Origin: Saccharolobus solfataricus P2
GTDB taxonomy: Archaea; Thermoproteota; Thermoprotei_A; Sulfolobales; Sulfolobaceae
Assembly (NCBI RefSeq): GCF_000007005.1
Contig: NC_002754.1
Length of the DNA stretch: 64,000 nt
Reading direction: 5' to 3' (one strand)
Below are positions 28,872 through 33,828 of the stretch, piece after piece. Within the stretch, counting starts at the first letter, position 1; each line of letters starts with the position of its first letter. The notes under the pieces were generated by a model. It did no database searches, was not told the DNA's origin, and saw only the letters and a program-made list of their open reading frames with translations. The translations under genes and the position numbers were made by a program.

Positions 28872-28924
28872 GCAGCTCATAGGGAAAAAAATAAATACCT
28901 TCCCCATTCTCATTATTATAGAGT

Positions 28925-29006
<82 letters not shown>

Positions 29007-29017
29007 ATGTGATTGAG

Positions 29018-31201
29018 ATGTTTGAAAATTACTTCATGGATGCGGTAAAGGGTTATTATAGGCATTTAGCGATAATTGAATCTCAAGATCCTTTAGAGAA
29101 GATTAATTCATTAATTGATGACTATTTAAAGGTTAACAAGAAGCCAAGGGTTATATACGGCTTTCATCCTTGGCTCGACAATTCAAAAGATAGAATGAAA
29201 GAGCTGAAAAAGAGATTTGAAAACTTTCTCGACATAGATTACTCCAATTCAGAGAAATATCTTGGGCAAAGCGCGGATTTGGTAATATTAGACGCAATGG
29301 ATGATTTTAGGCCTAACTACATTGCTAGATTCGTTGACATGACTAAGGGAGGAGGTATAGCGATAATCTACAGCGATAACATCCTAGAGGGTAAGTTGTA
29401 TAAGAAGTCTTTGACCAGGTATGGTGTTGTTAAAGATCTGTTTGAAGCTAGGTTTATTGAACTGGCTAAGAGATATAGAGGGATCATTTTCTTTCAAGGA
29501 AATGATAGGATAACTTTTACACCGTATTCCTCAAATGAAACTCACAAACCATACAAGAAAATACCTAAAAGTCCTAAAGTTTCGATGGAGCTTCATGAGC
29601 TTTGTCTATCTTCTGACCAGAACAAGGTTCTTGAGGAATCCTTGTTCATTATGAATCTAGGGAAAAGAGTTTTAGTAATAACTGCAGCAAGGGGTAGGGG
29701 TAAGAGTGCATCCATAGGTTTGTTTTTGTCTTATTTAATGAGTGAGGGAAATTTTGGTAGTATTATAGTAACTTCCCCAACGTACTATTCTTCACAAGAG
29801 ATATTCAAATTCATAATTAGAGGGTTAGAAGCTCTAAATGTTAAGTATAAGGTAATCACATCAAGGGATGGTAAGATAATGAAGATATCTACAAGGGATT
29901 CCAGGGTAAAATGGGTTTCTCCGGACTTAGCTAAAAATGAGGAGGGTGATTTAATAGTTATAGATGAGGCAGCTGCTATGGGTATAGAGTTTTTAGACTA
30001 TATCGTGAGATCTTGGGATAAGGTAATCTTGGTTACTACTATTCACGGTTATGAGGGTTCTGGGAAGGCATTTTTAAAGTACGTTGATAAACTGAAGGGT
30101 AAGGTTCTTTTGAAGAATATAAAGATGGATTATCCTATTAGGTATGCTAAGGGTGATCCTATTGAGAAGTTCTTATTTGATGTATTCTTATTGGATGCTG
30201 AACCGCATGAAGTTGAATATAATGGTAAGTTGAAAATAGTTGAGGTTCCTCAAGAGGAATTGTTTCGAGATGATGATTTGCTTAAGAGCGTTTATGGAAT
30301 ATTGGTTACTGCTCATTATAGGAATTCCCCTGATGATTTAATGCTTTTAGGCGATATGGCTTTCCAAAAGGTTATAGTAGGTTATTCATCTGAGAATCCT
30401 GTGGCAGTTTGTCAAGTTGTCTATGAGGGAGGTCTAACTGATAAGCAAATATGGGATATTTCCAATGGGTTAAAGAATGAGGGGCATTTGATTCCTCATA
30501 GGCTTATAAAGTACATGAGGGCTTTAGATTTCGGTAAGTTGAAGGGTTGGAGGATAATGAGGATTGCTGTTTCTCCGGAAAATCAAGGTAAGGGTATAGG
30601 GAGTAGAGTTATCGAAGAGGTTATTAAGATGGCGAAGGGAGTTGATTGGATTGGATCTTCATTTGTTGCAGATTACTCCGTTTTACGATTTTGGATAAAG
30701 AACGGATTTTTGCCGGTTTATTTATCCTCTATTAAGAATGAGGAACTTAATGGTTATTCGGTGATTGTGATTAAGGCTTTAAGCGAGAGAACTAAGGAGT
30801 TTGTTGTTAAACTTTCCAGTTTATTGAAGGATAAGCTATTGAGAACTTCTCATCAAGTCTATTATAATTTGAATCCTCAACTTATTGTTCTATTATTAAG
30901 GAATACTTACAGTGAAAGGATAGAGGGAGAGGTTCCAGATCTATATGTTGATAAGATTAAGGCTTATACTGAAGGTAAGGTTCCATATAATGTCATCGCT
31001 GAAGCTGCACATTTCTTAGTTACTAAACATTTTTTAGAACTTAAAGCCGATTTAAGTATAGAAGCCGAGGCTTCACTAGTAGCTAGAGTTTTACAAGGTA
31101 AAAGTTGGTATCATGCAGGTTTAATGTTAGGTTTGAGTAGTAGGGAAGTTGAAGATAATGTTAAGCAGAGTTTAGGGGTTTTGTTAGAAACTTATACTTA
31201 G
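29018..31201 (+). CDS. tmcA: tRNA/RNA cytidine acetyltransferase TmcA/Nat10 (helicase + GNAT); start revised out of the tRNA
   Basis: [47 protein letters not shown]. The track start at 28970 lies inside tRNA-Gly; GTG 29009 is an alternative start. Confidence 0.92.
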
Positions 31202-31940: not shown

Positions 31941-32501
31941 TTAATCTTTAACTATTGTTATTAAGGAATATCCTTTTTTTCTCTTTATGGATTCAATTTT
32001 AAATCTTTTACTGAATATTTTCTCTATATTTTCTTCACCCTTATATGCTATCAACTGTATGAATCCCTTTTCAACTAATCTATCATAGGCTTCGGCTTCA
32101 AGCTTCTTTAGAAAATCTACTCCTTTAGAAAGAGGAGGGTTAGAATAAATTGCGGTAAATTTAACGTCGATAGGAATGTTATCAAAGATATCTGATTTCA
32201 CTATTATTGTCCTATTTTCAACCCCATTAAGTTTTGCATTTTTCTTAGCCAGCTTAATTGCAATGTAGTTGACATCTACCATGTAGACCTTAAGGTTAGG
32301 ATTTTTCAATGCTAGGTAGATTCCTATGGGTCCGTAGCCACAACCAACGTCTGCTACAGTTCCGTTTTCCGCTACTTTTATGTTTTCCAAAAGTATCCTT
32401 GTTCCCAAATCTAGTTCCTTTTTTGAAAATATCCCCGGTGAGGATAGAAGGGTTAGAGGTATACCGTTAATTACTTCAAAAATTATGTACTCATGACTCA
32501 T
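31941..32501 (-). CDS. Class I SAM-dependent methyltransferase (RsmC/MTS-like)
   Basis: PGIFSKKELDLGT, DVGCGYG.IG, SNPP. Confidence 0.88.
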   Translation of the reverse strand: MSHEYIIFEVINGIPLTLLSSPGIFSKKELDLGTRILLENIKVAENGTVADVGCGYGPIGIYLALKNPNLKVYMVDVNYIAIKLAKKNAKLNGVENRTIIVKSDIFDNIPIDVKFTAIYSNPPLSKGVDFLKKLEAEAYDRLVEKGFIQLIAYKGEENIEKIFSKRFKIESIKRKKGYSLITIVKD

Positions 32502-33532
32502 GTTTTTTCCATGCTTTTGGATATATATCTCTCTGCATAAAAACTCTACTTAAGTTGACTACTATTCCCTTTTTTGCGTTTTCCAATTCTTCGCTGTCCA
32601 TTAGTGCGTTGCCTGTCGCTACTAATTCCCCTTTAAGCGTTAATACTGCGACTGTATCGTTCTTTTTAAAGTTCTGATAAGCTACTACTCCAGGTACTGC
32701 TAGTTGCGCACCATAAGCTAATGCGTTTACAGCTGAGTCTTCTATTACAATTTTTGGAATTTCACAAGTTGCGAATTCCATTGGTATAAGTACTCTTCTT
32801 AGTTCTGTTTCGTCTTTGCAGTTCTTGTATAAGTATATTGCTTCAGAAAGTTCGTGTAATTTCACTAGATTTGTGGATTCTGTGAAAATCCCGGATCTAG
32901 TTCTTCTTAGCTCTCTCATATGAGCTCCACAACCGTAAATTATTCCTATATCATGACATAATTTTCTCATGTACGTCCCGGAGTCACAGTTTACTCTAAG
33001 TAATACTAACTTCTTGTCCATGTCTAGAATTTCTATATCATATATTCTTCTAATTCTTAGTCTCCTTTTGACTGATGATCTAACTGGTGGTCGTTGGTAT
33101 ATTTCTCCTTTAAATGAACTTATTATCTTTGCCAATTCCTCTTTATTGTATTCACAGTGAACTTGCATTACACATACGTACTCTTTTCCTCCTTTACTTA
33201 TATAGTTCATTATTTTAGTTGCGTTCTCTATTCCTATTGGTAACACACCGGTAACTTTAGGATTACCCCGCCCAATGAATGGGCTCTAGGGTCCCCCCAT
33301 GTCCTGCTTTGGTAACGTTTAACATCTTTTTAACCCAATACGCTACTTCATGGCTCGTGGGCCCTGGAGGTTTATCAAGGTTTATTATTGAGTTTTTGAT
33401 ATGTATCTCTATTGGTCTTTTTTCTGGATAATATCCGTATTTATCTGATGTTTCACTATCCTTCCTTATCTTCCATTCATTTTTATATCCACAAAAATTA
33501 TCTATTTTGTAAATAAAATCATTTAAAATCAT
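32491..33532 (-). CDS. cbf5: H/ACA pseudouridine synthase Cbf5; two exons (33532-33286 and 33263-32491), 339 aa after splicing
   Basis: The two track ORFs join after removal of a 22-nt intron, restoring GHGGTLDPKVTG. Also LDKPPGPTSHEV, SGTYMRKLCHDIG and a PUA domain. Confidence 0.95.
33264..33285 (-). other. 22-nt bulge-helix-bulge intron in cbf5
   Basis: Minus strand GGGA-CCCU-AG^A-GCCC-AUUCAUU-GGGC-GGGG-UA^A-UCCU: two 3-nt bulges separated by a 4-bp helix. Confidence 0.93.
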
Positions 33533-33537
33533 CTAAA

Positions 33538-33828
33538 TCACAATGTTGGCATCCTAATCTTTATTTTCTCCTTCATGTACTCTGTTAAGTTGGACTCCTC
33601 TAATTTCTTCTTTACTTCCTCATCCGAAGCTCCTTTCTGTATATCAATTTTCTTATCAGTTGGTTCTAAGTGAAGAATGTTAACCCTTCTTCTCTTAACG
33701 CCAGTTATGTCTTTTGGTCCGGTGACTAATACGAAATTGTCATCTATTATGTCTACTATTACGCATTTGCTTCCAGCTTCTCTTCCTTTTACTTTTACAC
33801 AAATTCTTCCAACTTCTATTGCGGGCAT
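33538..33828 (-). CDS. rpl14e: 50S ribosomal protein eL14
   Basis: [34 protein letters not shown]. Confidence 0.96.

What the first reader, a model, noticed from the sequence alone, without database searches (positions are those of the whole stretch)
33255..33295. Protein-coding gene intron: a BHB intron splits the catalytic Asp codon of cbf5
Seen: the ORF track breaks Cbf5 in two. Removing AGCCCAUUCAUUGGGCGGGGUA (33285-33264) gives CTA GAT CCT and restores GTLDPKVTG. The junctions fold into a canonical bulge-helix-bulge (bulges AGA and UAA, helix CCCU/GGGG, intron stem GCCC/GGGC), and unspliced RNA terminates at an intronic UAA. Known: cbf5 introns are the rare documented case of archaeal pre-mRNA splicing by the tRNA splicing endonuclease, so this is striking but not new. 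Inference: it may tie pseudouridylation capacity to endonuclease activity.
Basis: partly seen in the sequence, partly recalled or inferred. Interest (0 to 1): 0.7.

Follow-up and report, generated by a model that had tools for sequence, protein, structure and literature searches.

The report
Known tRNA-type intron in archaeal cbf5
A 22-base intron of the kind normally found in tRNA genes interrupts the catalytic aspartate codon of the pseudouridine synthase gene cbf5 in this Sulfolobus-type archaeon; it is real, but it is the classic case published in 2002.

Summary
On the minus strand, cbf5 is split into an 89-aa ORF and a 251-aa ORF. Removing 33285-33264 (22 nt) joins CTA G|AT CCT and gives a 339-aa protein. 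That protein matches the Cbf5 equivalog model end to end and aligns without a gap to P. furiosus Cbf5 through GHGGTLDPKVTG.

The junctions can form a 4-3-4-3-4 bulge-helix-bulge, cut after the second base of each bulge. That pattern alone is not informative: 164 hits in the window against about 163 in shuffles.

The real support is threefold:
- 33 loci carry an insert at the same nucleotide. The central helix is 100% paired, and all four intron-stem pairs show compensatory changes.
- At least 24 public read-set assemblies match the window exactly except for these 22 nt.
- Published cDNA evidence exists for Sulfolobus solfataricus, which the window matches (22-nt intron).

Three corrections:
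- The premature UAA straddles the 3' splice site and is not purely intronic.
- The outer helix is not conserved across taxa, so the family motif is "relaxed".
- The regulatory idea is untested and was already proposed in the literature.

Verdict: already known, low interest. Side observation: Jordarchaeia (Asgard) MAGs and one Thermofilaceae-labelled MAG carry an insert at the same site.

The parts
33286..33532 (-). cbf5 exon 1 (247 nt: codons 1-82 plus the G of Asp83). It starts 5 nt after the stop of the upstream L14e gene.
   Evidence: NCBIfam profile positions 2-68 of Cbf5. DKCLD domain.
33264..33285 (-). 22-nt BHB intron AGCCCAUUCAUUGGGCGGGGUA. The boundary could be slid by 1 nt because both sides read A; the symmetric cut after the second base of each bulge gives this assignment.
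   Evidence: This exact stretch is absent from contigs L082 and L084-L093, which otherwise differ from the window by at most one base. Intron GC is 59% against 35% for the window.
32491..33263 (-). cbf5 exon 2 (773 nt: AT of Asp83, codons 84-339, and the stop). It overlaps the downstream methyltransferase gene by 11 nt.
   Evidence: NCBIfam profile positions 73-322. TruB_N, TruB_C_2 and PUA domains.
33259..33295 (-). Whole bulge-helix-bulge motif: outer helix h 33295-33292 with 33262-33259; central helix H 33291-33288 with 33269-33266; intron stem h' 33284-33281 with 33273-33270; loop 33280-33274.
   Evidence: Read directly from the sequence. Folds. Pair counts across 33 loci.
33285..33287 (-). 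5' bulge AGA. Cut between G33286 (last base of exon 1) and A33285 (first base of the intron).
   Evidence: Left unpaired in the MFE fold. AGA in 30 of the 32 intron-bearing rows.
33263..33265 (-). 3' bulge UAA. Cut between A33264 (last base of the intron) and A33263 (first base of exon 2). The same triplet is the in-frame stop of the unspliced message.
   Evidence: unspliced translation ends ...GTLEPIHWAG*.
33538..33828 (-). Context: ribosomal protein L14e gene immediately upstream, probably co-transcribed.
   Evidence: NCBIfam NF003320, 147 bits. The same L14e-cbf5 order is seen in other loci.
31941..32501 (-). Context: small-domain (MTS) methyltransferase gene overlapping the 3' end of cbf5.
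   Evidence: Pfam PF05175, 127.6 bits.

Best explanation
This is the cbf5 gene (catalytic subunit of the H/ACA pseudouridylation complex) of a Saccharolobus/Sulfolobus solfataricus-type genome. It is interrupted by a 22-nt archaeal bulge-helix-bulge intron.

The gene is transcribed with the intron. The exon-intron junctions fold so that two 3-nt bulges lie on opposite strands of a 4-bp helix (CCCU/GGGG), closed by a G+C-rich intron stem. The heterotetrameric tRNA splicing endonuclease EndA cuts after the second base of each bulge (AG|A and UA|A). An RtcB-type ligase then joins the exons. This rebuilds the codon GAU for the catalytic Asp83 and the reading frame of a 339-aa Cbf5. Unspliced RNA can only yield an 89-aa fragment lacking the Asp, because the 3' bulge UAA is an in-frame stop.

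Shown here: the split, the exact restoration, conservation and covariation of the motif, and intron-less transcript-like contigs.
Taken from the literature: cDNA evidence and endonuclease cleavage.
Inferred from general knowledge: the ligase.
For: 1. Sequence and ORFs.
2. The spliced protein is a complete Cbf5. NCBIfam equivalog gives 483.9 bits against a cutoff of 242, in one stretch over profile 2-322. Pfam shows four domains in order. phmmer gives E = 3e-108 to P. furiosus Cbf5 3lwo, with a gapless match across kaghggtldpkvtgvlp.
3. Across the 80 loci plus the window, 33 carry an insert at the same nucleotide and 48 carry none. Registers were fixed by the coding sequence, not by structure. 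On that basis H is paired in 100% of cells, with one double change (CCCU/GGGG to CACU/GGUG). The intron stem is paired in 99%, with compensatory changes at all four pairs. The covariation score is 0.249 against 0.093 in shuffles (0 of 500 reach it) and at most 0.104 for slid partners.
4. Contigs from public read sets (L082, L084-L093) differ from the window, wherever they align to it, only by exactly these 22 nt, apart from a single mismatch each in L085 and L087.
5. The 339-aa product is on record only from Logan read-set assemblies. Every NCBI genome record carries the two split ORFs.
6. Contig ends look transcript-like. L085 and L086 begin 2 and 5 codons inside the ribB ORF. L088-L090 begin within 33 nt of one another.
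7. Literature: a 22-bp intron with cDNA AB245525 in S. solfataricus; cleavage between the second and third bulge residues by the hetero-oligomeric endonuclease; circular-RNA junctions one nucleotide from the cbf5 intron in S. solfataricus.
8. The window's Cbf5 matches the S. solfataricus rows of the published alignment, allowing for OCR noise.
Against: - Thermodynamic prediction alone is weak. z is -2.3 for the 56-nt fold. The strict 3' bulge is not the MFE. With +/-120 nt of context, the H pairs drop to probability 0.04.
- The bare BHB pattern is as common as in shuffled sequence.
- I could not read the library type of the SRA runs, so the RNA origin of the intron-less contigs is inferred.
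- Some of those contigs are long (25 kb) and share an end with an intron-bearing contig. That would also fit DNA.
Confidence: 0.97

Rival explanations
1. Split gene or pseudogene. The two ORFs are translated separately, or not at all, and no RNA splicing takes place. The 22 nt would be a frameshifting insertion.
For: Gene callers and public annotation treat it this way. An 89-aa and a 251-aa product are on record for the window's own sequence (P0139, P0140). Most Sulfolobaceae entries are exon-2-only proteins of about 240-260 aa.
Against: - Neither ORF encodes the catalytic Asp. The N-terminal ORF ends GTLE..., and the C-terminal ORF starts at a GVL-internal GTG.
- The insert sits at the same nucleotide in 33 loci, with a conserved, co-varying helix around it.
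- Precisely spliced contigs exist.
- Published cDNA exists.
- Cbf5 is universal in archaea.
Confidence: 0.01
2. The intron-less contigs are DNA, not RNA. Some laboratory or natural strains would have lost the intron from the chromosome, so those contigs say nothing about splicing in this strain.
For: - Library metadata could not be read, and no paper in the library cites the runs.
- L082 is 25 kb long. It begins at the same window position (about 54067) as the intron-bearing contig L081.
Against: - The intron-less ORF occurs only in Logan read-set assemblies, never in an NCBI genome record of this species, although 12 index blocks hold contigs over 1 Mb.
- It turns up in at least 7 unrelated accession series, each time matching the window over the aligned stretch with at most one mismatch.
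- Neighbouring runs of one series give the spliced form (SRR10582085) and the unspliced form (SRR10582088).
- One contig (L083) breaks 17 nt before the junction.
- Contig ends fall at gene starts.
Confidence: 0.03
3. Regulatory reading (the reader's inference, and the 'negative regulator' hypothesis of Watanabe and colleagues). The intron is kept because splicing efficiency sets how much active Cbf5 is made, coupling pseudouridylation to splicing-endonuclease activity. The alternative is a neutral relic that is hard to lose.
For: - It lies in the catalytic codon, with a stop in the 3' bulge, so unspliced RNA is fully non-productive.
- It is retained at the same site in all 15 Sulfolobaceae rows of the Cbf5 tree (window plus 14 loci) and in many Desulfurococcales loci.
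- Both forms appear among read-set assemblies.
- The hypothesis is stated in the literature.
Against: - There are no quantitative data on spliced and unspliced ratios under any condition.
- Several lineages (Pyrodictiaceae, Ignicoccus, some Acidilobaceae) live without the intron.
- Conservation of H is partly forced by the coding sequence (Thr-Leu-Asp).
- Retention is also explained by the difficulty of precise deletion.
Confidence: 0.2

Closest known systems
cbf5 pre-mRNA intron of Sulfolobus solfataricus, S. tokodaii, S. acidocaldarius and Aeropyrum pernix (Watanabe et al. 2002; Yoshinari et al. 2006; Yokobori et al. 2009, PMC2738675)
   Same: - Same gene and same insertion point inside the catalytic Asp codon.
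- Same BHB-like junctions, cut between the second and third bulge residues.
- The length of 22 nt equals the value listed for S. solfataricus.
- The protein matches the S. solfataricus rows of the published alignment.

This is that intron.
   Different: Nothing of substance. The strain is not identified. The window's proteins occur on an NCBI contig of 3,034,024 bp.
Archaeal tRNA and rRNA bulge-helix-bulge introns cut by EndA
   Same: A 3-nt bulge, 4-bp helix, 3-nt bulge core. The cuts are symmetric. The intron is short and has no ORF. The enzyme system is the same according to the literature.
   Different: It sits in a protein-coding message, with no tRNA body. Across taxa only H and the intron-side helix are conserved. 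The exon-side helix h is paired in 71% of cells with no compensation. That makes it the relaxed form, attributed to the crenarchaeal (alpha-beta)2 enzyme.
Haloferax volcanii HVO_1309 mRNA, cleaved by the splicing endonuclease (cited in PMC10485636 and PMC7714728)
   Same: A second archaeal mRNA processed at a BHB by the tRNA splicing endonuclease.
   Different: A different gene and phylum, and a homodimeric enzyme. It is not inside a catalytic codon. I did not examine it here.
HAC1/XBP1 unconventional mRNA splicing in eukaryotes (Ire1 plus tRNA ligase). Comparison from general knowledge.
   Same: It works alike. A protein endonuclease cuts two structured sites in an mRNA, a tRNA-type ligase joins the exons, and removal of a short intron changes the reading frame and the product.
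   Different: The nuclease is Ire1, not EndA. The sites are stem-loops, not a BHB. It is a stress-regulated switch, which has not been shown for cbf5.

Membership tests
Archaeal BHB intron (EndA substrate) | Two 3-nt bulges on opposite strands, separated by a 4-bp helix | tested here: met
   CCCU/GGGG lies between AGA and UAA. H is paired in 100% of cells over 33 loci, with one compensatory double change. The MFE fold keeps H and the 5' bulge but shifts the 3' side by one pair.
Archaeal BHB intron (EndA substrate) | Symmetric cuts within the bulges give a junction that makes sense | tested here: met
   AG|A and UA|A give CUA GAU CCU, the full frame and the GTLDPKVTG motif. The same junction is present in L082 and L084-L093.
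Archaeal BHB intron (EndA substrate) | Flanking helices h and h' (strict hBHBh' form) | tested here: inconclusive
   In the window both can form (4 bp each). Across loci h' is 99% paired with compensation at all four pairs. The outer helix h is only 71% paired, with none. The strict form is 5.2 kcal/mol above the MFE at 37 C. This fits the 'relaxed' motif of the literature.
Archaeal BHB intron (EndA substrate) | Cleavage by the splicing endonuclease and ligation of the exons | not testable with these tools
   Reported for Sulfolobus cbf5 in the literature.
Archaeal BHB intron (EndA substrate) | Spliced RNA exists | tested here: met
   At least 24 read-set contigs lack exactly the 22 nt. Their RNA origin is inferred, not read from metadata. 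cDNA AB245525 is listed for S. solfataricus.
Cbf5 / TruB-family pseudouridine synthase | Domain order DKCLD, TruB_N, TruB_C_2, PUA, and full-length match to the Cbf5 equivalog model | tested here: met
   Pfam. NCBIfam NF003280, 483.9 bits against a cutoff of 242, and TIGR00425, 445 bits. PDB Cbf5 chains at E = 1e-108.
Cbf5 / TruB-family pseudouridine synthase | Catalytic Asp in the GxxGTLDPxxxG motif | tested here: met
   Present only after splicing, as Asp83. It aligns with ...ghggtldpkvsg... of P. furiosus Cbf5. That this Asp is the catalytic residue comes from the literature.
Orthologous cbf5 intron of Sulfolobales/Desulfurococcales | Same insertion nucleotide, host within Sulfolobaceae, and the length reported for the species | tested here: met
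   Same nucleotide in all 15 Sulfolobaceae rows (window plus 14 loci), and the window nests among them with SH-aLRT 100. The 22 nt equals the S. solfataricus entry.
Group I / group II intron, intein, programmed frameshift (considered) | Ribozyme core or in-frame protein insert; slippery site with an intact product | tested here: not met
   - 22 nt is too short for a ribozyme core.
- No Rfam family matches at the site; the only hit is a chance-level one in exon 1 (E = 0.35).
- 22 is not a multiple of 3, so it cannot be an intein.
- Reading through by any frameshift would still lack the Asp.

The most novel reading that the evidence does not exclude
The cbf5 intron is not confined to Sulfolobales and Desulfurococcales, as the published model has it. 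Five distinct Jordarchaeia-type (Asgard) loci and one Thermofilaceae-labelled MAG carry a 21-31 nt insert at the very same nucleotide of the Asp codon. In these the central helix is intact and compensated (CACU/GGUG), and the reading frame is broken or stopped, so splicing would be required.

If these bins are correctly assigned, there are two readings. Either the intron is older than the Sulfolobales/Desulfurococcales ancestor, or it has moved between phyla to an identical site. Either way an Asgard lineage, already known for heavily interrupted tRNA genes, would splice an mRNA with the tRNA endonuclease.
Probability: 0.5. Interest if true: 0.45.

Novelty: already known. Interest (0 to 1): 0.15.

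Why it matters
For the scan this is a true positive. Scientifically it adds nothing to what was published in 2002-2009 for this same species.

Its practical value lies in annotation:
- Public records still split the gene into 89-aa and 251-aa proteins.
- Most Sulfolobaceae Cbf5 entries are exon-2-only.
- Even a curated joined CDS of S. islandicus carries Glu in place of the catalytic Asp, because its junction is set 2 nt off.

Read-set assemblies can serve as a ready check of such junctions.

Tried and rejected
- **Rfam.** The whole window at gathering thresholds gave only four tRNAs. The local region at E <= 10 gave one chance-level hit (sRNA41, E = 0.35) inside exon 1. No curated family covers the intron.
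- **Strict 4-3-4-3-4 BHB pattern scan.** I scanned both strands for introns of 14-120 nt. There were 164 hits against 162.6 in shuffles, so the pattern cannot be used as evidence or to find further introns.
- **Folding with longer flanks.** The H helix has probability 0.9 with +/-60 nt and 0.04 with +/-120 nt. This was not informative.
- **Literature search for the SRA run numbers.** Nothing was found, so library types remain unverified.
- **Genome-collection scan.** It returned mostly distant loci. It favoured introns whose length is a multiple of 3, because tblastn reads through them. That enrichment is a ranking artefact, not biology. The window's own species was not among the 80 loci. I inferred its identity from the published alignment and from cluster data.
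- **AU test.** It does not reject placing the extra intron-bearing lineages with Sulfolobales and Desulfurococcales (p = 0.30). One gain or several cannot be decided.
- **Intein, group I/II intron, frameshifting and pseudogene** were considered and rejected (see the membership table).

Full report
**What is in the sequence.**
Read on the minus strand, the region is ...AAAGCAGGACATGGGGGGACCCTAG AGCCCATTCATTGGGCGGGGTA ATCCTAAAGTTACCGGTGTG.... The ORF list shows an 89-aa ORF (33532..33263, ending GTLEPIHWAG*) and, in another frame, a 251-aa ORF (33246..32491). Deleting 33285..33264 (22 nt) joins the 247-nt exon 1 to the 773-nt exon 2. The result is 1020 nt and a 339-aa protein reading ...KAGHGGTLDPKVTGVLP.... 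The Asp83 codon is rebuilt from G33286 and A33263-T33262. Because the intron's first base and exon 2's first base are both A, the boundaries could be slid by one base without changing the product. The symmetric cut after the second base of each bulge gives the stated coordinates.

**What the gene is.**
The spliced product carries DKCLD, TruB_N, TruB_C_2 and PUA in order.
- It scores 483.9 bits against the NCBIfam Cbf5 equivalog (cutoff 242), in a single stretch over profile positions 2-322.
- The two separate ORFs cover only positions 2-68 and 73-322.
- Against solved structures the best match is P. furiosus Cbf5 (3lwo, E = 3e-108). The alignment has no gap across kaghggtldpkvtgvlp.
- Upstream, 5 nt away, is the L14e gene. 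Downstream, overlapping by 11 nt, is a small-domain methyltransferase gene.

**The fold.**
The sequence allows a complete 4-3-4-3-4 motif:
- outer helix GGGA/UCCU;
- central helix CCCU/GGGG;
- intron stem GCCC/GGGC;
- bulges AGA and UAA.

The predicted MFE of the 56-nt piece (-22.5 kcal/mol, z = -2.3, 3 of 200 shuffles as good) contains the central helix, the AGA bulge and the intron stem. On the 3' side, however, it pairs A-U and leaves a 2x2 loop. The strict form costs 5.2 kcal/mol more at 37 C and 1.3 kcal/mol more at 80 C.

With longer flanks the prediction becomes unstable. A scan for the bare 12-pair pattern finds 164 instances in the window against 162.6 in shuffled sequence. Foldability alone is therefore not evidence.

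**Comparative evidence.**
A scan of one genome per species returned 80 cbf5 loci. I anchored the splice sites on the coding sequence only (end of the Leu codon, start of the Pro codon). On that basis, 32 sequences (the window and 31 loci) plus L067, found by hand, carry an insert of 17-57 nt at the same nucleotide. The other 48 loci carry none.

Pair counts on these 33 sequences:
- The central helix is paired in 100% of cells. One pair changes on both sides (CCCU/GGGG to CACU/GGUG).
- The intron stem is paired in 99%, with compensatory changes at all four pairs. Variants include GCAC/GUGC, ACCC/GGGU, GCUC/GAGC, GGGG/CUCC, GGAA/UUCC and GCGC/GCGC.
- The outer helix is paired in only 71%, with no compensation.
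- The covariation score is 0.249, against 0.093 +/- 0.013 in shuffles (0 of 500 reach it). With partners slid by 1-3 columns it is at most 0.104.

The conserved unit is thus helix H, the two bulges and the intron-side helix. That is the 'relaxed' motif which the literature ascribes to the crenarchaeal heterotetrameric endonuclease. In a Cbf5 tree the window sits inside a Sulfolobaceae clade of 15 rows, all intron-bearing (SH-aLRT 100).

**Transcript-like evidence.**
I looked up where the neighbouring helicase is encoded.
- One contig is identical to the window (L081).
- One (L082, SRR1801263) is identical over 8742 nt except that exactly the 22 nt are missing.
- The 339-aa spliced ORF is on record in 26 index blocks of the collection. 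Ten places were fetched (L084-L093, from seven accession series).
- Wherever they align to the window, all show the single 22-nt gap and at most one mismatch.
- The spliced protein is known only from Logan read-set assemblies. The NCBI genome records of this species carry the split ORFs.

I could not read the library types, and no paper in the library cites the runs. So the RNA origin is an inference. It is supported as follows:
- Both forms occur in neighbouring runs of one series.
- One contig stops 17 nt before the junction (L083).
- Contigs start 2 and 5 codons inside the ribB ORF (L085, L086).
- Three contigs start within 33 nt of one another (L088-L090).

The rival reading, DNA of intron-less strains, is not excluded. 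I give it about 3%.

**What is already known.**
Yokobori et al. 2009 (PMC2738675) summarise the field:
- cbf5 pre-mRNA splicing was found in 2002 in A. pernix, S. solfataricus and S. tokodaii.
- Cleavage depends on a BHB-like structure recognised by the splicing endonuclease.
- The cut lies between the second and third bulge residues.
- The authors proposed a negative regulatory role.

Their table lists 22 bp for S. solfataricus, with cDNA AB245525. The S. solfataricus rows of their alignment match the window's protein, allowing for OCR noise. The S. shibatae row differs. The closest named relatives of the window's proteins are S. islandicus (92%) and S. shibatae.

Danan et al. saw circularisation junctions one nucleotide from the cbf5 intron in S. 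solfataricus. A 2023 review treats cbf5 as the first archaeal mRNA spliced by the tRNA endonuclease. The finding is therefore the published case itself.

Observation: confirmed. Interpretation: supported.

Corrections:
- The stop that ends the unspliced frame is the 3' bulge UAA (33265-33263). It straddles the splice site.
- 'Canonical' is true of what this sequence can form, but not of the family-wide motif or of the MFE.
- The proposed link between pseudouridylation and endonuclease activity is untested and not new.

**Mechanism, with status of each step.**
- Transcription with L14e: inferred from the 5-nt spacing and from contigs spanning both genes.
- Folding of the junctions into the BHB: supported by covariation.
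- Cleavage by EndA at AG|A and UA|A: from the literature, consistent with the junction seen.
- Ligation by RtcB: general knowledge, not tested.
- Translation of the 339-aa Cbf5 with Asp83: shown at sequence level.
- Unspliced RNA gives an 89-aa fragment without the Asp: shown at sequence level.

**Things seen on the way.**
- **Jordarchaeia-type loci.** Five distinct loci carry a 27-31 nt insert at the same nucleotide: L049 (labelled Candidatus Jordarchaeales), L072, L094/L095, L096/L097 and L098. All have H = CACU/GGUG, varied but paired intron stems, and stops or frameshifts on read-through. All lie in the usual L34e-cmk-L14e-cbf5 neighbourhood.
- **Their protein relatives.** Six protein clusters at least 80% identical are all exon-2-only. 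The next relatives, at 63%, are full length.
- **A Thermofilaceae-labelled MAG (L067)** has a 21-nt insert.
- **Tree placement.** In the Cbf5 tree these lie outside the Sulfolobales/Desulfurococcales clade (SH-aLRT 98). An AU test does not reject joining them (p = 0.30).
- **Prior reports.** No paper in the library combines cbf5, Asgard and intron. A 2026 preprint reports that Jordiarchaeia tRNA genes are unusually rich in introns.
- **S. islandicus annotation.** The public 339-aa CDS reads GTLEPKV. Its DNA (CP001400) shows CTG G|AGCCCATTTCACTGGGCGGGGTA|AT CCA, a 23-nt intron. The annotated junction is therefore 2 nt off and puts Glu in place of the catalytic Asp.

**Verdict.**
This is a real feature, read correctly, and already known in this species. 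Interest is low. The wider distribution of the intron is the only lead worth a follow-up.

Noticed in passing
L049:3233-3262; L072, L094/L095, L096/L097, L098 (cbf5 loci of Jordarchaeia-type MAGs): An insert of 27-31 nt sits at the same nucleotide of the cbf5 Asp codon in five distinct Asgard (Jordarchaeia-labelled or closely related) loci. H is CACU/GGUG, a compensated form of CCCU/GGGG. The intron stems are paired but varied, and read-through meets a stop or a frameshift. The Cbf5 protein does not nest in the Sulfolobales/Desulfurococcales clade, although an AU test does not exclude that (p = 0.30). I found no report in the searchable literature.
   Followed up: partly
L067:3200-3220 (CAZJJA010000011, labelled uncultured Thermofilaceae): A 21-nt insert AGGGCTGCTAGGCCCGGGGAG lies at the same site, with intact H and intron stem and a stop on read-through. 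The 2009 survey found no intron in cultured Thermofilum. The bin's label may be wrong.
   Followed up: partly
L099:848-870 (S. islandicus M.14.25, CP001400) and protein P0145: The public joined CDS of S. islandicus Cbf5 (339 aa, for example ACP38460.1) reads GTLEPKV. The DNA shows a 23-nt intron whose BHB-consistent removal gives GTLDPKV. The annotated junction is 2 nt off and replaces the catalytic Asp with Glu.
   Followed up: yes
window 32491-33532: Public records of the window's own sequence hold two separate proteins (89 aa and 251 aa). Nearly all Sulfolobaceae Cbf5 entries are exon-2-only (about 240-260 aa). Some begin with residues read out of the intron (GRGNPKV, RGDPKV).
   Followed up: yes
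window 28924-29001 (tRNA-Gly) and 28976-31201 (TmcA-like acetyltransferase): Three read-set contigs end at 28975/28976, inside the tRNA-Gly gene. One contig (L087, SRR4096252) leaves the window's sequence exactly at the tRNA's 5' end (28924) and continues into ABC-transporter genes that are absent from the window. The 741-aa ORF call for the acetyltransferase starts inside the tRNA gene. This may be a strain rearrangement or an integration site.
   Followed up: no
window 33303 (end of contig L083, SRR1588090): One read-set contig stops 17 nt upstream of the 5' splice site. That fits a mixture of spliced and unspliced molecules in the sample, but the offset from the expected branch point is unexplained.
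   Followed up: no
L009, L019-L025, L033-L045, L051, L070 (Desulfurococcales/Acidilobaceae loci): All 17 non-Sulfolobaceae introns in the fetched set are multiples of 3 (27-57 nt). This is a selection artefact: tblastn reads through in-frame inserts and ranks those loci higher. The published survey lists many lengths that are not multiples of 3.
   Followed up: yes
window 33360-33429 (-): A weak Rfam match to archaeal sRNA41 (21 bits, gathering score 45, E = 0.35) lies inside cbf5 exon 1. It is most likely chance.
   Followed up: no
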